A stretch of 64,000 nucleotides of DNA from Rebecca billardiae RCC1528 (lineage: Eukaryota > Protista > Haptophyta), in contig OZ251247.1 in NCBI GenBank assembly GCA_965240325.2, forward strand, positions 992,001-1,056,000. Reading direction: 5' to 3'. The notes beneath the pieces were generated by a model. That model had not been told where the DNA came from. It saw nothing but the letters and a program-made list of their open reading frames with translations, and did not search any database. The position numbers and the translations under genes are program-made. Shown here in pieces: positions 31,883-63,917 of the stretch (the first letter of the stretch is position 1; the number at the start of each line of letters is the position of its first letter).

Positions 31883-34800
31883 TCAGCCCGCGAAGACAAA
31901 GGCGAGCGCGTCGAGGCCGGCGCGCGCGCCGCGCACGAGGCGCGTCTCGGCCAGCCTGCCCAGCGCCTGCGTCGCGCCGAGCGCGCGTACCAGCATGGGC
32001 GCGAGCTGCGGCAGCGCGTGCAGCAGCGGCTCCTCGAGCCCGAACGTTCCGAGAAGCGACCCGCCCCACGCGGCGAGCATCGCCTCGGTGCGCGCGCGGC
32101 CGAAGAGGCGTCCGTACACGATCACGAGCGCGCACAGGCCTGCGTACGCGCCCAGCATCGCCGCCCAGCCGAGCGGCGCGCGCGCCCAGCGCGGCGGCGG
32201 CGGGCACGGGCAGAGCGCGCGCGCCCACGCGCGCGCGCGCCGCTCGGCGGCGGCGCGGCGCGCGAGCCAGATTGCAATCTCCGCCTCGCCCACGCTGAGC
32301 TCGCGGCGGCGATCGAGATCTCGCAGCAGCCGCCGCCGCTCGTGCGGCAGCAGCGGGTCGCCCAGCTCGGCCATGATCAGCCCGACGCCCGCCTCGTCCA
32401 CGCGCCCGTCGCCCGCCGAGTCGCACACAGCAAACGCGGCGCGGAGCGCGGCCAGCTCGGCGGCGCTGAGCTCCGGCCGGGCGCGGAGCAGCAGGCTGGC
32501 GCTGCGGGTGCTGCTGCTGCCGCGGCTGCTGCTGCGCGCGCTGCGGGAGCTGCTCTGCCGCGGCGGGCGCGGCGCCACCGCCGCGCCGCCGCCGCGCCCG
32601 CCGGCGGGCGCGCGCGCGGGCGAGGGCGCCGCCATGCGCTGCCGCTGCCACGCGGCGCGCCACGAGCCGCTGCCAGCGGCCCACCAGCGCGCGCTGCCGC
32701 CGCCGCCGCCGGTGCCGCCGGTGCCGGCGTGGCCGCCGCCGGTGCCGGCCGGCGCGGTACCGAGGGGCGGCACCGGCGGCGGCGCGGCGGCGGCGGGCGC
32801 GCCTCCTTCGCCGCCTCCGCCCCGCGGCGCCCGCCGCGGCGTGGGCGGCGTGCGCGCGCCGCCGGTCTCGGGCGCGACGAGCGTCGAGGGGCGGCGCGGC
32901 GCGGCCACAACGGGCGACGCCTCGCACGAGCTGGGCAGCAGCGTGGGCGGGCGGCGCGGGCCGAGCGCCACTGCGCCATCACCGCCGCCGCCGTCGTCGT
33001 CCGCGTGCGTGGCCGCAGCCGCGTTGGCGTCCGCGCACGCCGCGCCGGGCGCGGCGGCGCGCGGCGGCGGCGAGGCGCGCGGCGGCGAGGGCGGCGGCGA
33101 CTCGGCCGCCGCAGCCGCGCCGCCGCCGTCGTCGCTCAGGAGCGCGGCGGGCGCGCGCGGCGAGAGGCGCGCGCACCCGCCGCCGCCGTCGCCCGCGGCC
33201 GCCGCGCCGGCCGGCGCGGCGCCGCCTGCGAGCAGCCGCTCCGCCGACGCGCCGAGCACCGGCGCGGCGAGATTGCAATCTCCCCACTCGGCCGACGCGC
33301 TGAGCACGGGCGCGGCGACGCGCGGCCGCGCCGACGAGGCGAACGAGGCGGCGGACTCGGTGGGCGAGCCCGCCTCCTCCTCCGCCGCGCCGCCATTGCC
33401 GGCATGGCTGCCAGCATGGCCGCCGCCGCCGCCGCCAGCATGGCCGCCAGCATGGCCGCCGCCGCCGCTGCCGGCGCTCGCGGGGCGGCGGAAGGAGCCT
33501 CGGGCGGACGAGGCGGCGGAGGCGGCGGCGGACGGCGGCGGCAGCGCGACGACTGGCGGCTGGAAGCCTGGCGGCTCGGCGGCGGCGGCGGCGGACGGGC
33601 CAGCGCCGTGGTGCGTGGGCGGGGGGCTGGCAGGGGTAGGGTTGGGGGTAGGGTTGGGCCCGGCTGGCGGCGGGCCGCCCGCCGCCGCCGCGCCCGCCGC
33701 GCCGCCGCTACCGCCGCCGCCGCCATCGGCCGCGGCGGCGGCGGCGGCGCGCGGCCGCGCGGCGGCGGGCGCGCCCGCGCCGAGCGCGCCGCCGCTCCGC
33801 AGCGGCGCGACGATGCCGCAGCCGCTCGTCGGCACGTTGGGCACGCGCACGCGGCGGCGCGCGCTGCCTCCCGCGCGCGCGCAGCCGCGGCGGGGCGCGC
33901 CTTCGCCTTCGCCTTCGCCGTCGTCGTCGGCGGCGCGCGCCAGCGCCGCCGTCGGCTCGGCCGGCGCCTCGGGGCTGGCGCCGAGCGGCGGCGGCGGCGG
34001 TGCGCGCGGCCGCGGCTGCGCGCCGCCGGCCGCGCCGAACGCGAACGGCGCGGGCCCGGCGTCGGCGCTCTGCGGCGCGCCGCCGACGCCCGGCGGCGCG
34101 CCGCCGACGCCCGGCGGCGCGCGGAGCTCCGCCGCGGATGAAGCAGCGCTCAGGCCGCCGCTGCCGCCGCTGCTGCTGCTGCGGCCGGTGCGCACGGTGC
34201 TGCAGCTGGCGCGCGCGCACGCGCCCTTTGCGTGCGCGCGCGACGGCGGCGGGCGCAGCAGCAGCCGCTCGGCGCGCGCGAGCGTCTCGCCGAGCGCGGC
34301 CGCCTCGGCCGCGCGCGCGCGCACCGCGCCCCGACCCAGCCCCGAGTGCGGCTGCGGCTGCGACGGCGCCTGTAGCTGCATTTGTAACCGCAGCTGCGCC
34401 TGCAGCTGCTGCCGCGCGCTGCCCGCGCGGCGCACCGCGCCGTGCAGCCGGCTCGCGGGCGTCGCGCGCGCCTCGTCCCCGTGCGCCGCGAGCCGCCACG
34501 CCGCCTTGAAAAAAAACAGCGCAGGGAGCGCCAGCGCGGCGCCGAGCAGCGCGTACAGTGCGGTGCCCAGCGCCGAGATTGCAATCTCGCCGCCGCCGCC
34601 GGAGCCGCCGCCCTCGGGCTCGGCCGCGCGGTGCAGCGCGCACTCGAGCGCGGCTGTGAGCGCGAGCGTGTTGAACACCACCTGCACCGCCTCCGCGCGG
34701 CGCAGCCCGCGCTCGGGCGGCGTGAGCAGCAGCGCCAGCAGCGTGTGCCGATCCAAAACCGCCTCGGCCGCGGCGCGCGCGCGCGCGAGCGCGCACACGC

Positions 34801-37800
34801 GGCGCGACGCGCACGCGCCGAGCGTGCCGCGCGCGGGCGGCGCGGCGGAGAAGCGACGGCCGAGGTCGTGGTGCGCGGCGATCTCGGCGGCGATCTCGGC
34901 GGCGGCGGCGGGCGAGATGGCGCTCTCGGCGGCGGCGGTGGCCGCGGCGGTAGCGGTAGCGGCGGGCGTGCGCGCGGGCAGCACGCGCCCGCAGCGCGCG
35001 CCGCCGCCGCCGCCGCCGCCGCTGGCCGCCGATGCGGCGGCGGAGGAGGCGGCGGAGGCGGCGCTGTGCCGCGTGCGCCGCGCCTCGCGCGGCGGCGGCG
35101 GCGCGGGCGCGGGCGCGGGCGCGGCCGGCGCAGCGGCCGGCGCCGCCGCCGCCACCAACCCCGCCGCCGCCGCGCCCTCCGCCGCCGCGCCGCCCGGCTC
35201 GTCGGCGCCGGCGGCGAGATTGCAATCTCCGCCGCCCGGCTCGTCGGCGACGGTGCGCGCGCCCAGGTACGCGTCGAGCGCGGCGCTCGCCTCCGCCTCG
35301 GCGGCGGCGGCGGCGGCGGCGGCCGCCTTGCGCGCGCGCAGCCGCGCGACGGTGGTCGTGGGCTCCGCCGCGGCGCGCGGCGGCCCGGGCGGCGGCGGCG
35401 CGCCGCCGCTGCCGCGGCCGCTGCCAAAGCTGCCGCCGCCGCCGCCGCCGCCCGCGTCGCTCGCGCGCGCCGAGCCGGCCGCGCTGCGCGGCGGCGAGTG
35501 CGCCGAGCCGGGCGGCGCCGCCGAGCCGGGCGCCTCGGCGCCGGCTGCGCTGCGGCGGCGGCGGTGCCGCGAGGTGGCGGCGGCGGCGGCGGCCAGCGCG
35601 GCGGCGCTGCCGCCGGAGCTGCTGCTGCGCCAGCTGCCGCCGTCGAGCCCCGCCGCCGCCCGCTCCGCCTTGGCGCGCCACCCGCCCCGCGCCGGACTCT
35701 CCCGGACTGCCGCCCCCGAATGTCCGGACGTCGCCTTCTCGGACGCGTGCCAGCGCGCGTACTCGGCGCGCGCGCGCCGGTCGGCCGCGGCGGCGAGCAG
35801 CAGGCACAGCGCGTTGAGGCCGGAGAGGAGGTAGACTAGGCGGTACACCGTCGGGTTCTCGCGGAGGCCCTCCGCGGGCGTGGCGAGCACCGACGCGGCC
35901 TCGGCCGCGCTGAACGTGTTCACGCGCACGGACGCCGCCTCGTCCGCCGCCGCCTCGCGACTGGCGGGCACCGACAGCGCGGCAAAGTCGGTGAGGTGGG
36001 TGCACGCGCAGTAGAGCAGCGAGGGGTCGGCGCCGTCGGGCGGCGCGGGCAGCGTCGTGCACCCCTCCGCCGACCACTCGCCCCGCGCCTCGTCCCACCA
36101 GTGGCACGCGTCCACGCGGCCGCACTCGGTCCCGTGGTACGGCGGCTCGCACTCGCAGCCGCGCAGCCCGGCGCGCAGCTCGACGCACGCGCCGCGCGCG
36201 CCGCACGGCGCCGCCGCGCCGTCGGCGGCGGCGGCGGCGGCGGCGCACGACGCGGACGGCTCGATGGCCGCCGCCGCCTCTCGCGCGGGCGGCAGCCCGA
36301 GCACGACCGGCTCGCGCAGCCCCGAGATTGCAATCTCGGCGCCGGCCGTCGGGTCGCGCAGCTGCGCGCGCAGCACGGCCGTGCGCAGCGGGCCGAGCAG
36401 CGCGCCGCCGCTCTGGTTGGCGGGCTCGGCATGCACATTCGGCCCGAAGGCGATGAGCACCACGTCGACGGGCGCGTCGGGCGCGGGCGCGCCGCCGCCG
36501 CCGCCGCCGCCGCCGCCCCACAGCGCCGCAGGCAGCGCGAGCGCGCCGCCGCCGCCCGCGCCGCGGAGCGTTGCGTTGGACGCGAGCGCCGCCGCCGTGC
36601 GCCGCGCCACGCTCACGTTGACGCGCGCCGACAGCGCCTCGGCGGGCAGCTCGCCCGGGACGGCGCCGGCGAGCAGCGCGAGCGCCAGGCCCGACGCCGC
36701 CTCGAGCGCCGCGCCGCCCAGCGCCACCGCCTCCTCCGCCGTGAGCGCGCCGCCGCCGCCGCCGCCGGGCGCGCCGAGCGCGCGGTCGACCGAGTTGAGC
36801 AGCGCGCTCGCCGTGCCGCCGTCGACGCCGCCGGCCGCGGCGGCCGCGCTCGCGAGCGCGGCCGCGTGCGCGAGCCCAGCGGCGCGCGTGGGCGCGTCGA
36901 GGCGCACCGGCGCGCCCAGCGCCGCCGCGAGCGCCGCCGCCGACTGCGCGCGCGCCTCGGCGGTGGGCGGCGCGACCGCCGCGCCGTCGGCCGCGGTGAG
37001 GAGCCTTACAATCTGGGCGACGAGCGCGCTGCCGTTGCCTGCCGCGAGCGCGCGCGCGCCAGCCGGCTCCTCGGCGAGCGCGTGCGCGAGCCCGTCGAGC
37101 AGCTGCATCGCCTCCGCGTGGTCTCCGCGCCCGAGCGCGGCGCGCGCGCGGCCGAGCGCGCCCGCGAGCGCCTCCCCGCCACCGTCGTCGTCGGGAGGTT
37201 CGACGGTGACAAGCACGGCGGGCGCGCTCGCGCGCGCGCCCACCGCGTCCTCGACGGTGAGCTGCAGCGCGCGCGGCCCCGCTGGCAGCAGCACGGACGC
37301 ACTGGGCGACGCGCCCGCCACGCCGAGCGGCGTGGCCGTGCGCTCGGCCGCGCCGCCCTCGCCGCCGCCGCCGCCACTCGCGGTGGCCGCGCGGCGCTGC
37401 GCGAACGCATAGCTCAGCGGCAGCTCGTCGGAGCGCCAGCCCTCCGCGTGGACGCGGAAGTGCGTGCGCAGCGCGATGCCGCCCGCGCTCGGCGCGGCGC
37501 TGAGCGCGCCGCCGTACGGCGGCCGGCTGATCGGCACGACGATGGACGCGCGCGCAACCTGCTGCTGCTGCCGCGCCGCCGAGCCGCCGCCGCCGCCGCC
37601 GCCGCCGCCGCCCGCCGCCTGCGTCACTGTCAGCTCGAACGCATACGTCGCGCCGGGCGTGAGCGCGCCCGAGCGGAAGGCGAGCGTGTGCCCCGACCCG
37701 CCGGTCGTCGTGACGGCGGCCGTGTCGTCCAGCTCGAGCCCCGCGTCGCCCTCGGGGGCGCCGCCCGCGCCGACGAGCCGCGCGCGCCAGCGCAGCGTGT

Positions 37801-40800
37801 ACGACGCAGCGCCGCTCGCCCGGCGCGCGGCCGACTCGGCGTCGAGCGCGGTGGCGAGGGCAAGCCGCGCGCTCGGCGCGGACCAGACCGCGCTGTACGC
37901 CGCGCGGCCGAGCGGGGCGAAGGTGATCGTCGGGACGGGCGCGGCGACGAGCGTCAGCCGCACCGCCGCGCTCGCGCCCTGCGGCAGCTCGGCCGCCGCC
38001 GCCGCGCTCGGGCGCGCGTCTGTGGGCTGCCCCTTGCTCACCGCCAGCGAAACCTCGTACTCGCCCGCGGCCAGCGCGCCCGGCGGCAGCAGCAGCACGG
38101 AGGCGTTGGTCGGCACGGCCGGCGGCAGCGGCTCGGCGGCGGGCGCGGAGCCGTTCGCCCCGCCGCCGCCGCCGCGCCCGCCCGCGCCCACCGCCACCAC
38201 GCGCCACGCAAACCGCAGCCCGTCCGCCGAGCCGGTGTTCGGGTCGAGCGTCGCGGACGCGTCCAGCCGCACGGGCCGCGCGGCGGCCATGCTGCGGTCG
38301 CCGCCGGCGATGGTCGCGCGCAGCGGCAGCTGCTCGACGCGCACGCGCACGCGCGCGCTCGCCGCCGCGCCGCCGTCCGCCGCCATCGCCGCCACCACCT
38401 GCAGCTCATACGTGTGCAGCGGCGACAGGCTGAACGGCGGCAGCAGCAGCGTCGGCGCGGACGCGGAGGCGCCGCCCAGCGCCGCCGGCCGCGCGGCGCC
38501 GCCGTCCGCGGGCTCGGCGCTGCCGGTGCGCGTGACGCCGAGCAGCGACCAGCTGAAGCGCACGCGCGCGTCCGCACCCGCCCAGCAGCCCGCGACCGCC
38601 GCCGCCGCGCTGAGCAGCGTCGGCGCCTCGGCGCGCGCCACCCGGAGCGCGGGGCCGTCGACCGCGACCGTCGGCGCGCCTTCGGCGCGCGCGCGCCACA
38701 CCGTGTGCGCTGCCGGCTCGGAGAGCGAGCCGAGCATCGCCGAGCGCACGCGGAGCGCAAAGGTGAGCGCGCTCGCGCGCGGCGCGAGCGCGCCCAGCCC
38801 GGGCAGCTCGAGCGCCGCGCCGCGCTCCGCGCGCAGCCGCGCGCTCAGAGCCGCCGCCTCGGCCTCGGACACGCCGGCCGATCGGCTCCGGTCGAGCGCC
38901 CACTCGTAGGCCAGACCCGCCGCGCCGCCGCCGGCCGAGGCGGAGCCGTCCAGCCGGAGCGTGGCGTCGGGGCAGCGCGAGAGCGTGTCGGGGCCCGAGA
39001 GCGCGGCGAGCGGCGTCGGGCACGGCACGCCGACGCCGCACGGCGCGTCCGCGTCGATGGTGGCGGCGCCGGCCGCCGCGAGCGCGGACGGGTCGCACGG
39101 CGGCGAGCAGACCGAGGCCGCCGGGCGCACCGCGCCCGCGCGCAGCGCCAGCGCCGAGCCCGGGCGCACGGCGGTGCCCACGCCGAGCTGCACCACCAGC
39201 GTCGACGCAGAGGGCCAGTAGCACGCCGGCTGCTCACCCAAGTTAGGGCTAGGCTGGTCAGGGTTAGGGTTAGGGTTAGGGTTAGGGCTCGTCCGGTTGG
39301 GCCCGGCGACGAGCGCGAGCGTACCGTCGTCGAGGGCGCGCGCGCACGCGCCGAGCGCGCCGCCCATGCCCGCGCGGTCGGTCGGCTGCGCGTCGAAGCG
39401 CAGCACGACGGACGTGGCGCTGCCGTCGAGGGACGCCGACACGAGCCGCGGCGCGTGCGCACCAATAAACGCAAACGCCACGCGCGCCGCGCCCGCCTCC
39501 GCATCCTCGTCGGGCGTGAACTGCTGCCCGTTGAGCGACACGCGCACCGCCGCGGGCGCGCCACCCTCCGCGCCGCCGTAGCTCGAGCGCACGTGCACGC
39601 GCGAGTCGGTGGCGTTGGTGGGCGGCGGCGCGAGCGCGTCGCCAAAGGCCACGCGGAGCAGACCGCCGAGCCCCGCGCCGTGCAGCGCGCCAAAGCACTC
39701 GCCCTCGATCGCTGTCGGCTCGCCCGCGCCGCCCTGCGCCGGGCGGATCGAGTGCAGCGCCGGCGGCGCGTAGTAGCGGAATGGCATGCCGTCGGCGGTG
39801 GTCGTGTGCGCGCTGCCGTTGCCCAGCGAGAGCTCGAGCGCGAGCGCGAGCGCGCCGCCGCGCGCGGGCGCGGGCTCGGACGCGGGCAGCGGCGGCAGCG
39901 TGCAGCGCGCGCGCGTGCTGCCGTCCGCGCCGTCAGGCAGCATGCTCGCGCGCGCCGCGCAGCCGCCGCCGCCGTCGCCACCACCACCACCCCGCAGCAC
40001 GCAGCACAGCTCGCCCTCGCCGTACTCGGCGAAGCCAACACCCTCGAGCGTCACCACCGTGCCGCCGCCCACCGGCCCGGCGGGCGGGTGCAGCGCGGCC
40101 ACGCGCACCGCGCCCATCTCGTACAGCGAGATTGCAATCTCGTCGCCAAACAGCGAGGGCGCGGAATACGCGCCGCCGTCGAGGCGCAGGCGGACGGCGT
40201 ACCGGCCGGCGGGCAGCGCGGAGCCGTCGGCCGCGGCGGAGGGCACCGCGCACGCCGCGGCGTGCGCGCTCAGCACGGCGGCGGGCGTGCTCGCCCCCGC
40301 GCCCGCGCCGCCGCCCGCGCGCGAAAACTCGCACGCCGCGGGCCCGAGGCCGCCGCCGCCACCGCCGCCACCGTCAGCGCCGACGCCCGCCGGGCCGACA
40401 AAGCCGTCGCCGCGCAGCGTGAGCACGGCCGCCGCGCCGAGCGGCGCGCCGAGCGGCGCGCTGCCGTGCACGACGGCGCGGATGGCGGGCGGCGGCGGCG
40501 GCGCGGCCGGAGGCGAGCTCGGCGGGCGCGGCGGCGGGAACGGAAGCTGGCGCGGCGGCGGCGGCGGCGACGGCGGGCGCGGCGGCGGCGGCTGGCGTGG
40601 CGGCGGCTGGCGTGGCGGCGCGCGCGGCGGCGGCGGCGGCGGCGGCGGGCGCGAGGGCGGCGGGCTCGGCGGCGACGACGGCGGAGCGCCCGGCGGCGGC
40701 GGCTGCGCCACGCACCCACCATCGTCCACCTCCGCCGCCGAGTCGTAGTTGCGCGCGCTCGGCTCCGTGCAGCCCTGCACCACCGGCACCGGCGGCGCGA

Positions 40801-43800
40801 GGACGCCCAGGGAGAGCCGCGCCGAGAGCTGCTCGAGCGTCCTCGCCTGCAGACGGCTGAGCACGTCGTCCGCGCCGCCGCCGGCGCTCGGCGTGAAGTA
40901 CGCAAGCACGACGCGCGCAGAGGCGGGCGCGACCGAGTGCACCCGCACCCAGCCCGTGGGCACGCCCGCCTCCTCGGCGACGGCGGCGGCGAGCTGCTGC
41001 TGCGCGGAGGGCGCGCCGAGGGCGTCGACGGAGGCGTCGACCGTGAGGGCCAGGTAGCCCTCCGAGCCCGGCGGCGGCGAGGGCGGTGGCGAGGGCGGCG
41101 GCGAGGGCGGCGGCGAGGGCGGCGGCGAGCTCGGCGGTAGCGACGGTGGCGGGCTTGCCAGTGGGCTTGGCGGTAGCGCCGGTGGCGGGCTCGGCGGTGA
41201 GCTCGGCGGCATGCCTGGTACCGCCGATGGCGGTGGCGAGGGCGGCGGGCTCGGCAGCAGCATGGGCGGCGGGCTCGGCGGCGGTGACGGCGGAGGGCTC
41301 GGTGGTGGGCTCGGAAGTAGCGACGGTGGCGGGCTCTGCGGTGGGCTCGGCGGAGGCGACGGTGGTGGGCTCGGCGGTGGGCCTGGCGGCAGCAATGGCG
41401 GAGGGCTCGGCGGTGGGCTTGGCGGCAGCGACGGCGGAGGGCTCGGCGGTGGGCTGGGCGCTGGCGACGGTGGTGGGCTCGGCGGCGGGCTCGGCGGCAC
41501 GCCTGGCACCAACGATGGCGGTGGCGAGGGCGGCGGGCTCGGCAGCAGCATGGGCGGCGGGCTCGGCGGAAGCAATGGCGGAGGGCTCGGCGGTGGGCTC
41601 GGAAGTAGCGACGGTGGCGGCCTCGGCGGTGGGCTTGGCGGCAGCGACGGTGGCGGGTTTGGCGGTGGGCTTGGCGGCAGCGACGGTGGCGGGCTTGGCG
41701 GTGGGCTCGGCGGCAGCGACGGCGGAGGGCTCGGCGGTGGGCTTAGCGGCAGCGACGGTGGCGGGCTCGGCGGCGGGCTCGGCGGAGGCGAAGGTGGCGG
41801 CCTCGGCGGTGGGCTTGGCGGCAGCGACGGTGGCGGGTTTGGCGGTGGGCTTGGCGGCAGCGACGGCGGAGGGCCCGGCGGTGGGCTCGGCGGCAGCGAC
41901 GGCGGAGGGCTCGGCGGTGGGCTTAGCGGCAGCGACGGTGGCGGGCTCGGCGGTGGGCTTGGCGGCAGCGACGGTGGCGGGCTTGCCAGTGGGCTTGGCG
42001 GTAGCGCCGGTGGCGGGCTCGGCGGTGGGCTCGGCGGCAGCGACGGCGGCGGGCTCGGCGGTGGGCTTGGCGGCACGCCTGGCACCACCGATGGCGGTGG
42101 CGAGGGCGGCGGGCTCGGCAGCAGCGTGGGCGGCGGGCTCGGCGGCAGCAATGGCGGAGGGCTCGGCGGTGGGCTTGGCGGCAGCGACGGCGGCGGGCTC
42201 GGCGGTGGGCTTGGCGGCACGCCTGGCACCACCGATGGCGGTGGCGAGGGCGGCGGGCTCGGCAGCAGCGTGGGCGGCGGGCTCGGCGGCGGTGACGGCG
42301 GAGGGCTCGGCGGCGGGCTCAGCGGAGGCGACGGTGGCGGGCTCGGCGGCGGGCTTGGCGGCAGCGACGGCGGAGGGCTCGGCGGTGGGCTTGGCGGCAG
42401 TGACGGCGGAGGGCTCGGTGGTGGGCTCGGAAGTAGCGACGGTGGCGGGCTCTGCGGTGGGCTCGGCGGAGGCGACGGTGGTGGGCTGGGCGGTGGGATG
42501 GGCGTTAGCGACGGTGGCGGGCTTGCCAGTGGGCTTGGCGGTAGCGCCGGTGGCGGGCTCGGCGGTGGGCTCGGCGGCAGCGACGGCGGCGGGCTCGGCG
42601 GTGGGCTTGGCGGCACGCCTGGCACCACCGATGGCGGTGGCGAGGGCGGCGGGCTCGGCAGCAGCGTGGGCGGCGGGCTCGGCGGCAGCAATGGCGGAGG
42701 GCTCGGCGGTGGGCTTGGCGGCAGCGACGGCGGCGGGCTCGGCGGTGGGCTTGGCGGCACGCCTGGCACCACCGATGGCGGTGGCGAGGGCGGCGGGCTC
42801 GGCAGCAGCGTGGGCGGCGGGCTCGGCGGCGGTGACGGCGGAGGGCTCGGCGGCGGGCTCAGCGGAGGCGACGGTGGCGGGCTCGGCGGCGGGCTTGGCG
42901 GCAGCGACGGCGGAGGGCTCGGCGGTGGGCTTGGCGGCAGTGACGGCGGAGGGCTCGGTGGTGGGCTCGGAAGTAGCGACGGTGGCGGGCTCTGCGGTGG
43001 GCTCGGCGGAGGCGACGGTGGTGGGCTGGGCGGTGGGATGGGCGTTAGCGACGGTGGCGGGCTCGGCGGTGGGCTTGGCGGCAGTGACGGCGGAGGGCTC
43101 GGTGGTGGGCTCGGAAGTAGCGACGGTGGCGGGTTCTGCGGTGGGCTCGGAGGAGGCGACGGTGGTGGGCTCGGCGGAGGGCCTGGCGGCAGCAATGGCG
43201 GAGGGCTCGGCGGTGGGCTTGGCGGCAGCGACGGCGGAGGGCTCGGCGGTGGGCTTGGCGCTGGCGACGGTGGTGGGCTCGGCGGCATGCCTGGTACCAA
43301 CGATGGCGGTGGCGAGGGCGGCGGGCTCGGCAGCAGCATGGGCGGCGGGCTCGGCGGAAGCAATGGCGGAGGGCTCGGCGGTGGGCTTGGCGGCAGCGAC
43401 GGTGGCGGGCTTGGCGGTGGGCTCGGCGGCAGCGACGGCGGCGGGCTCGGCGGTGGGCTCGGCGGCATGCCTGGTACCAACGATGGCGGTGGCGAGGGCG
43501 GCGGGCTCGGCAGCAGCATGGGCGGCGGGCTCGGCGGCGATGACGGCGGAGGGCTCGGCGGCGGGCTCGGCGGAGGCGAAGGTGGCGGCCTCGGTGGTGG
43601 GCTTGGCGGCAGCGACGGTGGCGGGTTTGGCGGTGGGCTTGGCGGCAGCGACGGTGGCGGGCCCGGCGGCGGGCTTGGCGGCAGTGACGGTGGCGGGCTC
43701 GGCGGTGGGATGGGCGTTAGCGACGGTGGCGGGCTCGGCGGTGGGCTTGGTGGCAGTGACGGCGGCGGGCTTGACGGTGGGCTGGGCGGTGGCGACGGTG

Positions 43801-50035: not shown

Positions 50036-50069
<34 letters not shown>

Positions 50070-51178
50070 AGCGGCGTCAGCGTCACACGCGCGACGCCGA
50101 GCGCGTAGCCGAGGCGCTCGGCGCCGGCCTCGGCGCGCGCGCGCTCCTCGTCGTCCGTGTACAGCCCCGCCAGCGCGTGCGCGTTCACCAGGAACGACGC
50201 GTGCGTCTCGTTCACCGCCAGCTCGAACGGCTGCGCCGTGACCGGGTCGGCGACGAGGGGCGGCGCGGCCGCGTACGCGTCGGTGAAGACCTGCGGCTGG
50301 AGTCCGGGGGAGAGCTCGCCGCCGATGATGCGCGTGTGCCACTGCGTGTACGGCGCGCGCCCGTAGAACGCGTTGAAGTCCCAGATCTGCGTGAGGAAGA
50401 ACCACGGGACCGACGGCGCATAAGTCGACCAGCAAAAAGAATCGTCATGGAAGCCCGTCGTGTGCTCGAGCACAGAGACGGCGGTGCGCGTCTGCACGTG
50501 CGTGGCGGCGGTGAAGTTGGCGGCGTACGCGTCGAGCACCGCCGCGCGCGTGCTCGGCGGCGCGAACAGCCCGTCGTTCGGCCACGTGTGCCACTCGCCC
50601 CAGTGACCCAGCAGCCCCGCCTGCACGACCGCGACGCGCGGATCGAGATTGTATCTCGCGCCGAGCTGGGCGATGAAGTGGACGAGGCAGGCGACGAGCG
50701 CGGGGTCGGCGTAGTCGGGCGACTGCCCGCCGCCGTGCTCCGTGTACGCCGTCATCCCCAGCCCGCCGTCCAGCAGGTACTGCGGCACGCCCGTGAAACT
50801 TCCGGGAAGGTCCAGCCAGAAGCGCGCGACCACGTGGCGCGCCTTGGCGGCGGCGGCGTCGAGCTTGGCGTCGAAGGCGGACCAGTCGTAGGCGCGCTCG
50901 GCCGTCACCACCTCGCGCACGGGCACCATCAGCAGGTCGAGCGACGCGTCCCACACGCCCGCGTCCCACCAGTCGTGCGGGTTGGTCAGGAACCCCTGGT
51001 ACGGGTTGGACCGGTGCGGCAGTCCGGTCCGGTTGGGCGGGCCGAGGTCCGGGGAGAGCTCGACGGGCGGGAGCGTGTCGCCCGCGCGCGCCGGCGCGGG
51101 CGTGCGCGCGGCGCCGAGCACGAGCACGAGCGCCGCCGCGGCGCGCGCGCGGGGGCGCGGCGCGGCGTGATGCGGCAT
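31883..51178 (-). CDS. Giant (~6,431 aa) polycystin-1/REJ-like membrane protein with DUF4832-like glycoside-hydrolase head, extensin-like stalk, GPS site and EF-hands
   Basis: ATG at 51178 followed by a signal-like AAAALVLVLGAA. GH-like NPYQGF..YDWSAFD..SPDYADP..GLLGHWGEWH..GFHDDSF..LGY..NDGVAPFYW (~49620-51010). SPPP repeats. GCTEPSARNYDSAAEVDDGGC. IPT-like LHPPAGPVGGGTVVTLEG and VSLNGQQFT. REJ-like LDASATLDPN and RPPYGG..F.V.A.GW..LPLSYAF. EGF-like CGARGAC..CECEPPYHGTEC. GPS CHWW..W..EGC..CACTHLTDFA (~35980-36108). PKD1-like TM segments (HTLLALL..R; VYGRLFG..EEPL). EF-hand-like AFAVCDSAGDGRVDEAGV. Small in-frame introns cannot be excluded. Confidence 0.88.
32269..32280. repeat. Palindrome core AGATTGCAATCT (13/14 match to GAGATTGCAATCTC), coding EIAIW
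   Basis: Read directly from sequence. Confidence 0.85.
33269..33282. repeat. 14-bp palindrome GAGATTGCAATCTC (coding GDCNL) at a tandem-duplication junction
   Basis: Flanking 32-bp direct repeats at 33239-33270 and 33287-33318. Confidence 0.95.
34575..34588. repeat. 14-bp palindrome GAGATTGCAATCTC (coding EIAIS)
   Basis: Adjacent to a (GCC)n tract. Confidence 0.95.
35216..35229. repeat. 14-bp palindrome GAGATTGCAATCTC (coding GDCNL) at a tandem-duplication junction
   Basis: Exact 20-bp direct repeats at 35188-35207 and 35230-35249. Confidence 0.95.
36324..36337. repeat. 14-bp palindrome GAGATTGCAATCTC (coding EIAIS); symmetry extends to 18 bp
   Basis: CCGAGATTGCAATCTCGG at 36322-36339. 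Confidence 0.95.
39264..39287 (+). repeat. Interstitial telomere-like (TTAGGG)4, in frame in the giant ORF (PNPNPNPN)
   Basis: Read directly; one more unit at 39243-39248. Confidence 0.9.
40128..40141. repeat. 14-bp palindrome GAGATTGCAATCTC (coding EIAIS)
   Basis: Read directly from sequence. Confidence 0.95.
41070..49600 (-). repeat. Coding minisatellite encoding ~2,840 aa of Ser-Pro3-4 (extensin/pherophorin-like) repeats
   Basis: Continuous GGCGGCGGGCTC-type repeats in two zones (SPPP(A/Q)PPPP at ~43960-49600; SLPP/VVPGVPP/LTPIPP at ~41070-43960). Exact 540-bp tandem duplication near 41970-43060. Confidence 0.95.
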
Positions 51179-51698
51179 GGCTACGAGCTGCTGGGCTCTC
51201 CGTGGCTGCCACTGAAGGGACGAACTTGCCGCCCGAGAAGTGATCGGCTGAACATAGTTAAAAATAGACTGACCGCGCAAACCGAAATGGCGCGCCTGGC
51301 GCTGATTGGCTCAGCGCGAACGACATGTGAACCCCGAGTACTCGTCGCTTGCATCAATCAAGATCGTCGTAGTTGATGCTGATGATCATTGTCGGTCCGG
51401 GCGTGAGGCGGCGGAAGGAATCTCGCACGAAGGACGACCCGCGAACGAAGCAGTGCGCGCGATGATCGCCGACGCCACGGCCCACGCCACGCCTTGCTTA
51501 GGAGCTGCGCTCGTCGGCTCATCTCGCTGCCCGTCGGCTGGCAGGCTGCGTCAGCTAGAGTAGTCAGCCGCGCCGCCCGGCGCTGCTTAACCAGCTATAG
51601 TAGCACGCGGGCAGCGTGCGGGCCGCCGCCATGCTGCGCACACGCCGACGGCAGCTGATGCCAGGTACTGAATGACCCGCGCCAAGCGCGGCCCGCGG

Positions 51699-52680
51699 CT
51701 ACTGCGCCCCCTCCGGCGTGCCACCGCCGGAGGGAGGCGAAGGAGCGGCGCCCCCCTGCTGCTGCGGCTCCTCCGAGCTCGGCCCGTCGTCGTCGTCGGC
51801 CGCGTCCTCCGCGGCGGCGGCGGCGGCAGGCTCCAGCGGCGCCCCCTGGCCCATCAGCCCGGCGAGCGCACCGCCCTCCGCCTCCGCCGCCGCCAAGTCC
51901 GCGTCCGCGACGGCGAGGCGCAGCCGCCCAAGCCAGAACGACACGTGCCCGGCGCACAGGCAAAAGTCGAGCGGCGCGCCGCGCGCGCGCGCCCACGGCT
52001 CGTCGCGCCGCGTGCGAAGCCAGTGCTGCCACCCGAGCCGCGCGTCGTTGACGAGAGAGGTCACGATGGTCGGCGCTGCGGTGTTTGGTCCGTTCGCCGC
52101 GCCGGCGGCGGCGTCGGCGGCGGCGCGCACGACGGCCTCCGCGCTCTCCCAGCGGCGCAGCACGTACCCCGGCGCCGCGCGCTCCTCCGGACTCGTCACC
52201 ATCACCATCTCCGGCTGCGCGTGCTGGACGAGCTCGTGCGCGAGCGCGCTCGCGGCGCGCGCGCGCTCGCCGCTCGGCGCGCGCGCGTCCGCGAGCAGCA
52301 GGACGAGCGCCTCGAGCGCGGCGGTGACGTACGCGCCTGGCTCGAGCACGCCGCGCTCGCCGCGGCCCGTGAGCGCCCCCAGCTTGAGCCCGTCCAGCGC
52401 GTCGAGGCACTGCAGTAGCAGCCCATGCGACACAGCGAACGACTCGACAGTGCACAGCGCGTCTGCCGCCGTGCCCATCGCCCAGTCCGCCGCGCAGCCG
52501 GTGCGCGCGGCCTGGTACGCGGAGAGCGCGCAGAGCTCGCGGCTCACGTTGCACAGGCCCGCGTGCACGCACAGCGCGAACATGCGCAGCGCGCCGTGCA
52601 GCGCGCACGCGGCGCGGCGGAAGCTCGCGGGGACGTCCACCTCAGCCGCCGCCGCCGAGATTGCAATCTCGGCCGCCGCC

Positions 52681-52718
<38 letters not shown>

Positions 52719-54116
52719 CGGCTGGCCGCCACCGCCGTCCGCGGCAGCGGCGGCGCCGCCGCCGCCGCCACCAGGCACGCCCGCCACAGCCCCGCCCGCG
52801 GCGGCGGGCATTGGCTGGGCGCCCGCCGCCATCGCGGCCAGGAGCTGAGGCTGGGGGCCCGGCGCCATCGCGGCCAGCGCCGGCGGCTGGGCGCCCGCCG
52901 CCATCGCGGCCAGGAGCTGAGGCTGGGGGCCCGGCGCCATTGCGGCCAGCGCCGGCGGCTGGGCGCCCGCCGCCATCGCGGCCAGGAGCATTGGCTGGGG
53001 GCCCGGCGCCATCGCGGCCAGCGCCGGCGGCACGCTCCGGAACGGCCCGAGCAGCCGGCACGCCAGGCAGGAGAGCGCCTGGAGCGCGGCGGCGCGCTCG
53101 GCGGCGCCGCCGGCGCAGCCGCCCGGGCCGGAGAGGTTAGGGTTAGGGTTAGGGTTGGGGTGGTTAGGGGCAGGAGGAGGGGGAGGGGTCGTCCCTGCGA
53201 GAAGCAGCCGGACATCCTCGCACGCCTCGCAGGCGTGCTGGAGCTCGAGCACGCCGTCGTCGAAGGCGATCGTGTACGGCGGCGCAGCGTCGCCACCCGC
53301 GCCGCCGCCGCCGCCACCGCCGCCGTCGGCCGCGGCGCCCGCGGGCGCGGGCGGCGGCGCGAGCGCGCACAGACCGATTGGCACAAAGCGCGCCGCGCGC
53401 AGCCGGCCGCAGCCATCCGCGCCGCCGGCCTCGTCGTGCAGCGCGTCGACGCCAGCCTCGTCCGGCTGCGCGTGCGCGAGCAGCGCGCCCTCGGGGGGCT
53501 CGGGCGCCACCGGCTCCGGCTCGCCGCCCGCCCCGGGCTCGGGCGCCACCGGCTCCGGCTCGCCGCCCGCCACCGCCTCGCGCAGCGCGAGCGACCGGAA
53601 CGTTGCAGCGAAGAGCACGCACGCGCGGAAGTAGCGCTCGTCGGCCGGGAGCGCGGCGACGCCAGCGCCGCGCGGCGGCGTGCTGCGTGGCGGGGGTAGC
53701 TGTAGCTGCGGCTGCTCGGCCGCGGGGCTCGGCCCCGCGCCGCCGCCGCGCGCCGCCGCCGCGGCGGCCGCCTCCGCCTGTAGCTGCGCGCTCACTTGGA
53801 GCAAGCGCGCGCGCGCGGCCTCGCGCAGGCCGCGCAGCGCCCGGCGCAGCGCGGGCTTGGACGCGCCGCAGTGGAGCATCTCGGCGCGCTGCGTCACCAT
53901 GCCCCGCGGCCACGCCAAGGCGAAGCACGTGCGGTTGACGCAGCCGAACGCGAGCACGGGCGCTAGGTCGCACACGCCGTGCCGCGCGGGGTCGGGCGCG
54001 GGCAGGAGGCGCAGGATGGCGGCCGCGAGGTCGGGCGTGTTGAAGACGAGCTGCGCGAGCCCGCGCGACGGCGCGTCGGCCGCGTGAGGCGAGGCTGCTC
54101 GCGTCGGGGCCGCCAT
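51699..54116 (-). CDS. Uncharacterised protein (~805 aa) with an N-terminal F-box-like motif
   Basis: ATG at 54116. VFNTPDLAAAILRLL...DLAPVLAFGCVNRTC resembles an F-box. Host-like GC3-rich codons. Three internal LAAMAPGPQPxLLAAMAAGAQP repeats, an in-frame TTAGGG tract and the palindrome. Confidence 0.75.
52657..52670. repeat. 14-bp palindrome GAGATTGCAATCTC inside a poly-Ala codon tract; symmetry extends to 20 bp
   Basis: GCCGAGATTGCAATCTCGGC at 52654-52673. Confidence 0.95.
53137..53169 (+). repeat. Interstitial telomere-like TTAGGG tract, in frame (PNHPNPNPNPN)
   Basis: Three consecutive perfect units, then TTGGGG and a further TTAGGG. Confidence 0.85.
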
Positions 54117-54375
54117 CGCGCCCTTCGGGGTTGCGAGGGCCGAGGCGCGGCTTGTGGTGGTGGGGGCTTTTGCCTTTTGGGCCAGTCCGAGGCTCCGGGC
54201 GACAGGATGTGAGAGCCAATCGATAATATTTCCGTCGTATCGGTCGCATTTCTTCATCAATAATACCAGATAAACTCTACATACGAGCGCCGATCGATGA
54301 TTTCCGTCGTATCGGTCCTTCCAGTAGTGGGCAAAGAGCTGGCAGTGCTCTTCCTTTCATGTTGAACCACTGGGA

Positions 54376-59337: not shown

Positions 59338-59499
59338 ATATATATATATATATATATATAGAATAGAATAATATGATGATGATGACGATGATGATGATCG
59401 ACGATATGTATGAGTTATTCATCGCACGCATTGCGGTCGCATGCTCAATCGGTCACACAGCAGCATCATCAACGATATTTCTGCTGCTTTTTTAAAGCG

Positions 59500-61282: not shown

Positions 61283-62132
61283 TCACTGCGCGCGGTGTTG
61301 CAGCGCCTCCGCCTGCGGATGGCTCGGCGCGCCCGGAGGCGGCTGCATCCCGCACCCGTACCCCGCCGCCGCCGCCGCCATCGCCGCGTGCGCGGCGCCG
61401 CCGGGCGGCGCGCCCATGCCCGCGCCGAGCGGCAGCGGCGGCTGCAGCGGCCCCACCGCCACGCCGAGCTGCGGCTGCGCGTGCTGCGCGTGCGGCGGCG
61501 GCTGCGCGTACGGGTGCGGCGCGCCGTGCGGCGGCGGCCCGCCGCCGGCCATCGGCGGCTGCAGCAGCGGCGGCGGCGGCTGGCGGAGCAGCTGGCGCTG
61601 CTGCAGCAGCGCGGGGTGCAGGTGCGCCGCCCCCTGCGCCGCGTGCTGCTGCTGCTGCTGCTGCTGCGCGGCCGCGGCGGCGTGCGCGTGCGCCGCCGCC
61701 GCCGCGTGCGCGTGCGCCGCCGCCTGCGCCTGCGCCTGCTGCTGCTGCGCCGCGGCCGCGTGCGCGTGCGCCGCGGCGTGCGCGTGCGCGGCCGCCGCGT
61801 GCTGCTGCGCGTGCGTCACGCCGAGCGCCGGCGGCTGCTGCGCCGCGCGGTGCGCACCCCCCGGCGAGCGCGGCGGCGGCTGCTGCGGCTGCGCGCCGCC
61901 CGCGTAGTCCGGGTAATCCGGGTAATCCGGGTGGCCGCCGGGCGGCGGCGCGAGCCCGAGCGCGCCGAGCGCGCCGCCGAGCGCCTCGTCCGCCACGCCG
62001 CCGCCGCCGCCGCCGAGCGCGGCCGAGCGCGCGTGCTGCTGCTGCTGCGCCGCCCACGCGCCGCCACCGCCGCCGCCACCGCCGCCGCAGAGGTGGTGCG
62101 CGCCCGGCTGCAAGCTCGCGGCGACCCACGCG

Positions 62133-62171
<39 letters not shown>

Positions 62172-62383
62172 AGCGCGGCGCGCGGCGGCGGCGGCGGCAT
62201 CAGCCGCTGCTGCTGCTGCTGCTGCTCGGCGGCGGCGGCGGCGGCTGCGTCAAGCTGTGCCTGCTGCTGCTGCTGCATCAGCTGCTGCTGCTGCTGCATC
62301 AGCTGCGCCTGCGCCTGCGCCTGCGCGTCGGCCGGCGGCGCGGGCGGCACGCCGCCGCCGCCGCCGCCGCCGGGAGCGACGGC

Positions 62384-62419
<36 letters not shown>

Positions 62420-63917
62420 GGTCGCCGCCTCGTGCTCGCGCCGCTGCCGCTCCGCCTGCTGCCGCGCCTGCGCGCGCGCGCGCGCCACGCCGGCGGCGCG
62501 GTGTGTGCGCACGGGGGCGGCGCGGGCGCGGGCGCGGGGCACGAAGGGAGGGCAGGCGGTGAGCGCGAGATTGCAATCTCGCGCGCGCCGGCGCGCAGTT
62601 GCACCCTCGCGCGCGGCGCGGCGCGCGCGGCGCCGCGCGCGAGATTGCAATCTCGCGCACACCTGCGCGAGCGCCGCGGGCGCCTCCGCCTCGCGCGCCG
62701 CCTCGTCCGCCGCGTTGGCCGCGCCGATCTCCGCCGCCACGTCCGGCGCGTCCGCCACCGCCGCCACGTCGAACGAGTCCGGGGAAAGTCCGGACGCGTG
62801 CCGGTCCCACGCGTGCGCGAGCGACTCCTCCCACTCCGCCACCCACGCGCGCGTGTTGAACAGCGGCGTGCTGAGCCGGTTGGCCCACAGCCGCGCGCGC
62901 AGCTCGGCATACGACCCCAGGTCTGTCGCCCAGCGCACCGCCTTCTCCTCATACTCGCGCATCGACTCGGCCACCATCTCCGGGCAGCCGATCGCGTGGC
63001 ACAGCGACGCCGCCACGCGCGAGCTCATGTGCGCCTGCATGCACGTGAGCATCGGCACCCCGCTCCACAGACAGTCGGTGCCGGTGGTGTGGCCGTTACA
63101 CACCGGCGTGTCGAGGAACAGGTGCGCCACGCACGAGCGCGCGATGTAGTGCGCCTTCTCGGCGACGTTGGTGAAGACGACGCGCTCGCGCGGCACGCCG
63201 CGCGCCTCCGCCTCGCAGTGCACCGCCGCCTGCGCCTGCGGCGGGAAGCGCAGCAGCCACAGGTACGAATGCGGCACGCGGCGCAGCACCGCGCACCACA
63301 CGTCAAACGTCGCCGGGTCGAGCTTGTACAGCTGGTTGAAGCAGCAGAATAAAAAGCCGGTGGGCGGGAGGCCGAGCTCGAGCCGCCGGCCCGCCACGTC
63401 CGCCGCGCCCGCGAGGCCGGTGCCCGCGGTGGGCGGCGGCGGCGGCGGCTGCGGCGCGCCCGCGGCCGCGGCGGCGGCGGCGGCGGCGGTCGCGGCCGTG
63501 ATCGCCTGCGAACCCGCCGCGCCCGCGTGCGGGCCCACGCCCGCCGGTCCGGCGTGCGCCGCCGCGGCGGCCGCGGCGCGCGCCGCGGCGACAAACGGCG
63601 CCGCGGCGGGCAGCGGGCTCGGCGCGCTCGGCGGCGCCGCGCGCCCAAAGTCGTCCGGGCGCACGCACGCCTCGGGACGCAGCAGCGGCAGCGCGCGCTC
63701 ATCGTACGCCTGCCGGTGGTCGTTGACGAAATACGAGTGCGGCATCCGAATGATCTTCTCGCCGTACGCCCACTCGAGCTCGGGCGGCGTGACGACGCGG
63801 TCGCTCACCAGGTAGTCGATGTACGCGGCGCCCATCGTCGCGGGGAATCCCATGTACAGCAGCTGCACGCGCGCGGGGCGGAGCGCGAAGATCTCGTTGC
63901 GCGCGCCCTTTGTGTAG
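61283..63917 (-). CDS. OGT: O-GlcNAc transferase (GT41, SEC/OGT type), 3' exons; 5' part lies beyond the window
   Basis: YTKGARNEIFALRPARVQLLYMGFPATMGAAYIDYLVSD..YGEKIIRMPHSYFVNDH; FCCFNQLYKLDP..W..VLRRVPHSYLWLLRFP; LFLDTPVCNGHTTGTDCLWSGVPMLT..SRVAAS. Acceptor CAG at 63920-63918. Probable 195-nt intron at 62468-62662. Confidence 0.93.
62468..62662 (-). other. Probable 195-nt GT-AG intron in OGT holding two copies of the palindrome (62567-62580, 62641-62654)
   Basis: Minus strand reads GCGCAG|GTGTGC...GCGCAG|GCG. Removing it deletes an Arg/Ala-rich, non-protein-like stretch and joins ALAQ to ARQQAERQRREHE in frame. Confidence 0.7.

What the first reader, a model, noticed from the sequence alone, without database searches (positions are those of the whole stretch)
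32269..62654. Highly iterated 14-bp palindrome GAGATTGCAATCTC embedded in unrelated genes
Seen: exact copies at 33269, 34575, 35216, 36324, 40128, 52657, 62567 and 62641, a 13/14 copy at 32268-32281, and a near copy GAGATTGTATCTC at 50645. It is an AT-rich word in extremely GC-rich DNA. It occurs in three unrelated genes, is read in two frames in exons (EIAIS, GDCNL) and also lies in an intron, so it is a DNA-level signal rather than a protein motif. Symmetry often extends into the flanks (up to 22 bp). I saw no copy in the satellite, RCC1 array or transposons. Established: cyanobacterial HIP1 and bacterial DNA uptake sequences are short words iterated inside genes regardless of frame. Inference: a eukaryotic analogue, such as a repair or transposition scar, a recombination site, or a binding or methylation site for a dimeric protein.
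Basis: partly seen in the sequence, partly recalled or inferred. Interest (0 to 1): 0.88.

Follow-up and report, generated by a model that had tools for sequence, protein, structure and literature searches.

The report
Iterated palindrome written in place into genes
An AT-rich 14-16 bp palindrome recurs exactly in three unrelated, extremely GC-rich algal genes, and in conserved protein segments it replaces the ancestral codons rather than being inserted, so it looks like a eukaryotic counterpart of the cyanobacterial HIP1 word.

Summary
There are 8 exact copies of GAGATTGCAATCTC and one 13/14 copy, against none expected by chance. The 50645 near copy is only borderline.

All copies lie in three unrelated minus-strand genes: a giant REJ/GPS receptor, an unknown protein and an O-GlcNAc transferase.

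The main new result concerns origin. In conserved segments of the receptor the word was not inserted. Homologues (35-41% identity) align across the word-encoded EIAIS without a five-residue gap at four sites. A telomere-repeat segment in the same gene shows up as a clear 19-residue insertion, so the method does detect insertions.

The best homologue reads GAG CTC GAC ATC TCG where the window reads GAG ATT GCA ATC TCG. The 13/14 copy misses only where a conserved Trp codon forbids the word. The word uses codons that are rare elsewhere (ATT, GCA).

There are no clearly decayed copies, and the palindrome extends into the flanks more than chance allows.

Other contexts exist. Two copies sit between 24-33 nt direct duplications in low-complexity linkers. 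Two sit in a candidate intron, where they pair into a roughly 100-nt hairpin.

Best reading: a HIP1-like, DNA-level word made and kept by sequence-directed conversion. The mechanism is not established.

The scan noted this word before in at least five other stretches of this genome. One earlier follow-up read it as a ready-made insertion; that does not hold for the conserved-segment copies here. No sequencing run was listed, so there is no read evidence.

The parts
32268..32281 (-). 13/14 copy. It is read as GAG ATT GCA ATC TGG (EIAIW) in the helix after an EF-hand loop. The single mismatch is the last base.
   Evidence: Six homologues align gaplessly (a seventh lacks this segment). The Glu and Trp are conserved, so the mismatch lies in the conserved Trp codon.
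33269..33282 (-). Exact copy in the GDCNL frame, in a low-complexity linker, lying between two direct duplications (an A-P-A arrangement with a 48-nt period).
33236..33316 (.). 33-nt direct duplication (33236-33268 and 33284-33316, 4 mismatches) flanking the copy at 33269.
34575..34588 (-). Exact copy in the EIAIS frame at the start of a transmembrane helix. The palindrome is 16 bp including flanks.
   Evidence: It aligns to GVVVT of the single covering homologue, P0249, with no gap across the word; a 2-residue gap lies just after it.
35216..35229 (-). Exact copy in the GDCNL frame, in a linker, between direct duplications (A-P-A, 42-nt period).
35188..35253 (.). 24-nt direct duplication (35188-35211 and 35230-35253, 1 mismatch) flanking the copy at 35216.
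36324..36337 (-). Exact copy in the EIAIS frame, in an ordered segment of the GAIN/GPS region. The palindrome is 18 bp including flanks.
   Evidence: gapless against 12 homologues (E-L-D-I-S, V-L-A-I-S and similar); the orthologous DNA reads GAG CTC GAC ATC TCG and GAG CTC GCG CTC TCG; the model has pLDDT about 87 in this block.
40128..40141 (-). Exact copy in the EIAIS frame, in the last strand of an IPT/TIG-like domain. The palindrome is 16 bp including flanks.
   Evidence: six homologues align with only a 1-residue gap next to the word. The two Ile match the V/F strand positions.
50645..50657 (-). Possible constrained near copy (12/14 with one gap), lying in the conserved GARY(D/N)xDPR motif of the head domain and using the rare codons AGA and AAT.
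   Evidence: It is gapless against 6 homologues. Its significance is borderline.
52657..52670 (-). Exact copy in the EIAIS frame within a poly-Ala/Gly stretch of an unknown protein. The palindrome is 20 bp including flanks.
   Evidence: No homologues were found, so its origin cannot be classified.
62468..62662 (-). Candidate 195-nt intron of the O-GlcNAc transferase gene (CAG|GTGTGC ... pyrimidine tract ... GCGCAG|G) holding two exact copies.
   Evidence: Inferred from sequence only.
62641..62654 (-). Exact copy at positions +9 to +22 of the candidate intron. The palindrome is 22 bp including flanks.
62567..62580 (-). Exact copy in the middle of the intron, just upstream of the pyrimidine tract. 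The palindrome is 22 bp including flanks.
62560..62662 (-). Hairpin of about 100 nt formed by pairing of the two intronic copies and their flanks. It starts at the first base of the candidate intron.
   Evidence: whole-intron fold of -133 kcal/mol, z = -4.8; only sub-threshold resemblances to miRNA-precursor shapes.
62595..62608 (-). Possible decayed third copy between the two intronic copies (GAGGGTGCAACTGC on the minus strand; 9/14 on the core, 17/22 when the GCGC flanks are counted).
   Evidence: Compared by eye; not statistically separable from background.

Best explanation
The word is a lineage-specific, DNA-level iterated palindrome. Its core is GAGATTGCAATCTC, usually extended to CGAGATTGCAATCTCG or longer. 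It behaves like cyanobacterial HIP1.

Shown: in conserved coding segments it was written in place, by replacing a few central nucleotides of pre-existing codons, and it persists wherever the protein can accept E-I-A-I-S. Shown: in unconstrained sequence (low-complexity linkers, an intron) it also occurs with duplicated flanks or as a paired hairpin.

Inferred: a sequence-directed conversion process makes and keeps it, working against the genome's strong GC pressure. That process could be either biased repair of heteroduplex toward the word or copying of a short templated patch at breaks. The word is probably recognised as a symmetric site by a dimeric protein, or as a hairpin. Protein-level selection then filters where it survives. 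The enzyme, the template and any benefit to the cell are unknown.
For: - The word is present far above chance, and the mismatch spectrum is bimodal: 8 copies at 0 mismatches, 1 at 1, none at 2, and control levels at 3-5.
- In-place origin: homologues align across the word with no five-residue gap at 36324 (12 homologues, gapless), 32268 (6, gapless), 40128 (6, with a 1-residue gap beside the word) and 34575 (1).
- A positive control in the same protein, the telomere-repeat NPNPNP segment, shows as a 19-residue insertion.
- The orthologous DNA reads GAG CTC GAC ATC TCG GGG CTG in the best homologue and GAG CTC GCG CTC TCG in Diacronema lutheri, against GAG ATT GCA ATC TCG GGG CTG here. Against the best homologue the changes are clustered in the central 6 nt.
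- The only mismatch of the 13/14 copy falls in a conserved Trp codon.
- The word's codons are off-bias: ATT is 13% of Ile and GCA 2% of Ala elsewhere. All five E-I-A-I-[S/W] peptides in the three genes are encoded by the word.
- There are no copies in the 8.6-kb proline stalk. I assume, but did not test, that this stalk would tolerate insertions.
- Flank symmetry exceeds chance, p about 0.004.
- The word is absent from 48 kb of five homologous loci in relatives, and neither metagenome nor viral collections hold a multi-copy contig.
Against: - No enzyme, template, methylation or read data are available.
- A step-by-step mismatch-repair drive should start from near-cognate sites, and these are rare. 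Apart from the eight exact copies, which fit the pattern by construction, only two sites in 64 kb fit GAG-N6-ATCTC or its reverse complement. The high density of the word is therefore hard to reach by point changes alone.
- Two copies with duplicated flanks and two intronic copies look like insertions, so more than one route is needed.
- An earlier follow-up on another piece of this genome read the word as an insertion.
- The sample is ten copies in one window.
- The relatives are distant (about 40% identity), so ancestral states are approximate.
Confidence: 0.5

Rival explanations
1. The word is a functional cis-element: a binding or modification site for a dimeric DNA-binding protein, or an RNA hairpin in the transcript. 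In this reading ordinary natural selection keeps it at a certain density in these genes, and the copies arose by whatever mutations happened to occur.
For: - The copies are exact and there are no intermediates.
- The palindrome extends into the flanks.
- Copies occur in exons and in a candidate intron of transcribed genes only.
- Five copies are roughly 0.6-1.3 kb apart in the receptor's 3' part.
- Rare codons are kept against a GC3 of 0.94.
Against: Each in-place copy needs three to four specific changes, some of them non-synonymous. No partial sites are visible that could supply a selective gradient. Nine paralogous F-box/RCC1-like genes in the same window have no copy. No function was tested.
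Confidence: 0.25
2. The word is a ready-made mobile insertion or a transposon excision footprint. In this reading it lands in genes and survives only in tolerant places such as linkers and new introns. This was the reading of the earlier follow-up.
For: - Copies at 33269 and 35216 sit exactly between 24-33 nt direct duplications that keep the frame (periods 48 and 42 nt).
- Two copies lie in a candidate intron, the first at +9, and they form a TIR-like hairpin.
Against: - Four copies in conserved segments show no five-residue insertion relative to homologues, whereas a true insertion in the same gene is seen clearly.
- Those copies have no target duplications.
- The proline stalk, which should tolerate insertions, has none.
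- 5% of random positions in these genes also have flanking repeats this strong.
- No element with these ends occurs elsewhere in the window.
Confidence: 0.1
3. The word is an adapter, linker, assembly or base-calling artefact.
For: Independent libraries could not be checked; no run was listed.
Against: - A 14-nt artefact would break reading frames, but the frame is kept at every copy.
- The encoded residues fit conserved positions of homologues, and the one mismatch respects a conserved Trp.
- The word has been noted in many windows of the genome.
Confidence: 0.02

Closest known systems
HIP1 (GCGATCGC), the highly iterated palindrome of cyanobacteria (Elhai 2015, PMC4390886; Rodriguez-Cruz et al. 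2026, PMC13756078)
   Same: It is a short palindrome far above chance and dispersed inside unrelated genes. One-off deviants sit at the outermost base. Its origin is attributed to a repair-type process rather than transposition. That HIP1 is also read in different frames and in place is from my own knowledge, not from the abstracts read here.
   Different: This word is eukaryotic and nuclear. It is 14-22 bp rather than 8, and AT-rich in an 80-85% GC background rather than GC-rich. It also occurs with duplicated flanks and in an intron. No cognate methyltransferase is known, and natural transformation is not expected to apply.
Rickettsia palindromic elements (RPE; from my own knowledge: Ogata et al. 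2000)
   Same: They are palindromic repeats found in frame inside protein-coding genes and are translated.
   Different: RPEs are 100-150 bp mobile insertions that appear as extra segments in alignments. Here the copies in conserved segments add no five-residue segment and the unit is 14-16 bp.
Very-short-patch (Vsr/Dcm-type) repair bias (from my own knowledge; the related model for HIP is in PMC4390886)
   Same: A sequence-specific repair activity can enrich its own recognition word in place and deplete one-off variants.
   Different: The known systems are bacterial, tied to 5mC deamination and act on one mismatch at a time. Here several clustered changes per site are needed, and no enzyme is known.
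Introner-type and MITE-type elements of algae that create introns (from my own knowledge)
   Same: One candidate intron starts with a roughly 100-nt hairpin whose arms contain the word.
   Different: No second copy of that hairpin occurs in the window, and no target duplication was seen. Most copies here are exonic and in place.

Membership tests
HIP-type highly iterated palindrome | A short palindromic word is strongly over-represented against base composition. | tested here: met
   There are 8 exact copies against 0.00 in shuffles. Forty control palindromes of the same composition gave 0.
HIP-type highly iterated palindrome | The word is dispersed within unrelated coding sequences in more than one frame. 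| tested here: met
   It occurs in three unrelated genes, in the EIAIS and GDCNL frames, and in the GDCNL and RLQS frames inside a candidate intron.
HIP-type highly iterated palindrome | The word occupies pre-existing positions (substitution) rather than being a mobile insertion. | tested here: met
   Alignments to homologues show no five-residue gap at 4 sites, and a positive control for insertion was detected. This is not met for the two copies with duplicated flanks.
HIP-type highly iterated palindrome | A cognate DNA methyltransferase recognises the word or its core. | not testable with these tools
   No genome-wide gene set or base-modification data are available for this organism.
HIP1 proper (cyanobacterial GCGATCGC) | The sequence is GCGATCGC in a cyanobacterial chromosome. 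| tested here: not met
   The word is different. The host has spliceosomal-type gene structure, TTAGGG repeats, and homologues in the haptophyte Diacronema lutheri.
Transposon, MITE or excision footprint | The copy appears as an insertion relative to orthologues and has a target-site duplication of fixed length. | tested here: not met
   There is no five-residue gap at 4 sites and no consistent flanking direct repeat. Only 2 of 10 copies have flanking repeats, of different lengths.
Transposon, MITE or excision footprint | A parent element exists whose termini carry the word. | tested here: inconclusive
   None was found in this window apart from the single intronic hairpin 62560-62662. The rest of the genome could not be searched.
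Rickettsia-type palindromic element in genes | An in-frame inserted segment of about 100-150 bp is visible as an extra loop in alignments. | tested here: not met
   The unit is 14-16 bp and adds no five-residue segment in conserved regions.
Introner-like element | A repeated element supplies splice sites and is found at many intron positions. | tested here: inconclusive
   There is one candidate intron with the word at +9. No RNA evidence was available, and there is no second copy in the window.

The most novel reading that the evidence does not exclude
A eukaryote may possess an active 'word-writing' system. This would be a trans-acting, sequence-directed conversion machine that overwrites short stretches of genes with one fixed 14-16-nt palindrome. 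It could work through biased heteroduplex repair, or through a polymerase or reverse transcriptase copying a fixed short template. It would act in place at near-cognate sites and as filler at breaks, and it would hold the word against GC-biased conversion.
Probability: 0.2. Interest if true: 0.95.

Novelty: new variant of a known kind. Interest (0 to 1): 0.8.

Why it matters
Highly iterated palindromes written into genes are known from cyanobacteria, and their origin is still debated. Here a nuclear eukaryotic genome shows the same behaviour with a much longer and more specific word, and several nucleotides change together at conserved codons. That points to a directed DNA-conversion or maintenance activity not described in eukaryotes.

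The system would be experimentally tractable: it has a long unique word and clear before/after states in orthologues. It could be used to study sequence-specific biased gene conversion, its interplay with extreme GC-biased conversion, and how DNA-level drives reshape protein sequence, since Leu/Val/Phe positions were turned into Ile here. It also warns annotators that these AT-rich islands are translated, not introns or errors.

Tried and rejected
- **Read evidence.** The look-up of sequencing runs listed no run, so read laying was never used.
- **Same organism or close kin in protein databases.** The best O-GlcNAc transferase hits were 44-56% identical. The unknown gene had no homologue at all, so copy 52657 could not be classified.
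- **Metagenome scan** with GC-flanked word. It gave 46 single-copy loci. Most look bacterial to me (terminator-like hairpins and one recurring conserved gene). None of the nine GC-rich loci tested resembled the window beyond low-complexity matches.
- **Viral scans.** They gave 0 hits with GC flanks and 94 stretches without (80 listed, each with a single copy). I rejected a viral source or a widespread shared element.
- **Target-site duplications.** I searched at every copy and found flanking repeats at only two.
- **Decayed copies.** I searched at 1-5 mismatches and found none above control level.
- **A parent transposon in the window.** Only weak half-word resemblances turned up at 23840-23945; I rejected these as chance.
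- **Short in-frame introns around exonic copies.** The 62-nt candidate at 33269 would break the frame, and the homologue alignments show the word-encoded residues are part of the protein.
- **Rfam search of the intronic hairpin.** Only far sub-threshold resemblances to miRNA-precursor shapes.
- **Literature.** The word itself is not in the paper library. A search for 'highly iterated palindrome' plus 'eukaryot' returned only cyanobacterial papers.
- **Absence from the nine F-box/RCC1-like genes (GC3 0.85).** I considered this as evidence for a link to extreme GC3. I dropped it because the nine genes are recent paralogues and so not independent.
Full report
**Observation.** The word GAGATTGCAATCTC occurs exactly eight times, at 33269, 34575, 35216, 36324, 40128, 52657, 62567 and 62641. 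A 13/14 copy lies at 32268. Dinucleotide-preserving shuffles give 0.00 exact copies and 0.01 copies with up to two mismatches. The hexamer TTGCAA occurs nine times in the 64 kb, each time inside the word. The DNA around the copies is 78-86% GC.

The mismatch spectrum is sharply bimodal. There are eight copies at 0 mismatches, one at 1 and none at 2. Counts at 3-5 mismatches match those of forty control palindromes of the same composition. The near copy at 50645 is a 12/14 match with one gap. My rough chance expectation for such a match is about 0.05 per window, so I treat it as borderline.

**Gene context.** All copies lie in three minus-strand genes:
- The first is a giant ORF at 31883-51280, with REJ and GPS domains and a DUF4874-like head.
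- The second is an ORF at 51699-54260 with no Pfam match and no homologue.
- The third is the C-terminal part of a GT41 O-GlcNAc transferase, at 61283-63868.

The position of highest GC (the third codon position) is the same on both sides of every copy in the giant ORF, so the word is read in frame. It is read as E-I-A-I-S four times and E-I-A-I-W once, and as G-D-C-N-L twice.

The two copies at 62567 and 62641 lie in a 195-nt stretch with the signals of an intron. On the minus strand it runs CAG|GTGTGC, then a pyrimidine tract, then GCGCAG|G. This is inferred from sequence only.

**The word is a DNA-level feature.** Outside the word, ATT makes up 5 of 38 Ile codons and GCA 25 of 1273 Ala codons, and GC3 is 0.94. 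All five in-frame EIAI copies nevertheless use ATT and GCA. Every E-I-A-I-[S/W] peptide in the three genes is encoded by the word. The palindrome extends beyond 14 bp in six of eight exact copies, to 16, 16, 18, 20, 22 and 22 bp. The mean extension is 1.9 against 0.56 for random positions, p about 0.004. On the coding strand the base after CTC is G in all nine 14-nt copies. Allowing for codon context, I estimate p at about 0.01.

**Insertion or in place?** An exhaustive profile search with 1200 residues of the receptor found homologues at 35-41% identity.
- At 36324, the window's G-A-E-I-A-I-S-G-L-R-E-P aligns without any gap to twelve homologues, which read for example A-S-E-L-D-I-S-G-L-S-Q-P or G-S-V-L-A-I-S-G-L-A-T-P.
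- At 32268, E-A-E-I-A-I-W-L aligns gaplessly to six homologues (a seventh lacks this segment). The Glu, which by my reading of the alignment is the last residue of an EF-hand loop, and the Trp are conserved. The single mismatch of this copy (CTG instead of CTC) therefore falls in the conserved Trp codon.
- At 40128, the word encodes the last strand of an IPT/TIG-like domain. Six homologues align with only a one-residue gap beside it, and the two Ile fall on their V/L/F positions.
- At 34575, the one covering homologue has G-V-V-V-T opposite E-I-A-I-S.

As a control for the method, the telomere-repeat-encoded segment S-P-N-P-N-P-N-P-N-P-D-Q-P-S-P-N-L-G-E of the same protein appears as a 19-residue insertion against six homologues. 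An AlphaFold model of the GAIN/GPS region has mean pLDDT 83. It places the 36324 copy in a confidently modelled segment (pLDDT about 87), not in a floppy linker.

**Orthologous DNA.** The contig encoding the best homologue is 74% GC. It reads GAG CTC GAC ATC TCG GGG CTG where the window reads GAG ATT GCA ATC TCG GGG CTG. Diacronema lutheri reads GAG CTC GCG CTC TCG. That contig is JAGTXO010000018.1, and the accession is confirmed in PMC8379373.

In the best homologue the outer parts of the word were therefore already present, and the changes lie in the central six nucleotides. Five homologous loci from relatives, 48 kb in all at 67-75% GC, contain no copy of the word and no other iterated AT-containing palindrome. 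Metagenome and viral collections hold only single, chance-level copies. The word therefore appears specific to this lineage.

**Random insertion plus tolerance does not fit.** The 8.6-kb proline-rich stalk of the receptor (about 41000-49700) has no copy. I assume, but did not test, that it would tolerate insertions. Meanwhile four to five copies sit in conserved segments. None of those copies has a flanking direct repeat above background.

**Not all copies fit in-place origin.** The copies at 33269 and 35216, both in the GDCNL frame and both in low-complexity linkers, sit exactly between direct duplications. These are 33 nt with 4 mismatches and 24 nt with 1 mismatch, giving frame-keeping periods of 48 and 42 nt. 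This looks like a break with filled-in overhangs sealed around the word. However, 5% of random positions in these repeat-rich genes have flanking repeats as strong.

The two intronic copies, with their flanks, pair into a hairpin of about 100 nt that starts at the first base of the candidate intron. The whole intron folds at -133 kcal/mol, z = -4.8. Rfam gives only far sub-threshold resemblances to miRNA-precursor shapes. A possible decayed third copy lies between them at 62595-62608.

**Mechanism.** Shown:
- The word is a DNA-level feature.
- In conserved segments it arose in place.
- Where it occurs in conserved segments it respects protein constraint.
- It is lineage-specific, lacks intermediates and has extended symmetry.

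Inferred: a sequence-directed conversion process writes and keeps the word against strong GC pressure. Two forms fit the data.
- One is biased repair of heteroduplex toward the word, as in Elhai's model for HIP1 (PMC4390886). This explains the constrained 13/14 copy and the lack of one-off variants. It struggles with supply, because near-cognate precursors are rare.
- The other is short templated patches copied at breaks from a common donor. These would be guided by microhomology at near-cognate sites and captured as filler elsewhere. This covers both classes of copy, and it explains a tract ending inside the word at 32268. No donor is known.

A purely selective origin for a binding site remains possible. 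It would need several specific changes per site with no visible gradient. I put about 0.5 on the conversion reading as a whole, 0.25 on a selected cis-element, 0.1 on insertion as the main origin and 0.02 on artefact.

**Comparison with what is known.** The closest known thing is HIP1 of cyanobacteria. It is over-represented inside unrelated genes, its deviants sit at the outer bases, and its proposed origin is a repair-type process (PMC4390886; PMC13756078). That HIP1 is read in several frames and in place is from my own knowledge.

The differences are that this word is nuclear and eukaryotic, is 14-22 bp, is AT-rich in extreme GC, also occurs in insertion-like and intronic contexts, and has no known methyltransferase. 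It is not a Rickettsia-type palindromic element or a MITE footprint, because the defining insertion signature was tested and not met for the conserved-segment copies. The word is absent from the paper library, and a search for 'highly iterated palindrome' plus 'eukaryot' returned only cyanobacterial work.

**Relation to earlier notes of this scan.** The same word was noted in at least five other stretches of this genome. One follow-up (s1-332039) read it as a young ready-made insertion at intron starts and in floppy linkers, and not HIP1-like. In this window that reading fits at most four copies: two in linkers and two in the intron. It is contradicted for the four conserved-segment copies. 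Note s1-363309, which places the word at the junction of in-frame tandem duplications, is confirmed for 33269 and 35216.

**Limits.** There are ten copies in one window. The relatives are only about 40% identical. There are no reads, population data or modification data. The organism is not identified beyond having homologues in a pavlovophyte haptophyte and TTAGGG repeats.

Noticed in passing
window 39264-39284 and 53132-53156: Telomere repeats, (TTAGGG) three or more times over, lie in frame inside exons of two genes and are read as N-P-N-P-N-P. The one in the receptor is part of a 19-residue insertion relative to six homologues. This is consistent with break healing or capture of telomeric DNA in coding sequence.
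   Followed up: partly
window 6290-31753: Nine paralogous minus-strand genes of about 500 residues share the N-terminus MRTTQQAREAAPPP...LARLPVELV. Earlier notes of this scan describe the neighbouring genes as F-box/RCC1; I did not run a domain search on them. Their GC3 is 0.83-0.86, against 0.91-0.95 in the word-bearing genes, and they carry no copy of the word.
   Followed up: partly
window 62560-62662 (minus strand): A hairpin of about 100 nt starts at the first base of a candidate O-GlcNAc transferase intron. Its arms are GTG(T/A)GCGC plus the word plus GCGC. It is possibly an introner-like or MITE-like unit that supplies the GT donor.
   Followed up: partly
window 50645-50657: A near copy of the word lies in the conserved GARY(D/N)xDPR motif of the DUF4874-like head. 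It uses the very rare Arg codon AGA (2 of 380 elsewhere) and AAT (5 of 61). It may be a half-site-wise approach to the word under protein constraint, or it may be chance.
   Followed up: partly
window 31883-51280; loci L047, L050: The giant REJ/GPS/EF-hand receptor has full-length homologues in Diacronema lutheri (JAGTXO010000018.1) and in GC-rich metagenomic contigs at about 40% identity. The protein family is thus shared with pavlovophyte haptophytes.
   Followed up: partly
window 41000-49700: An 8.6-kb proline-rich tandem array (periods of 12, 15 and 36 nt, strong G-over-C skew on the plus strand) forms the receptor's stalk. It carries no word copies.
   Followed up: no
window 23840-23945: Half-word-like strings (TCTCGCAATC and GAGAGATTGCGC) occur about 80 nt apart in a lower-GC region that I take to be transposon-like. 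This is probably chance, but it is the only place outside the genes with GAGATTG.
   Followed up: partly
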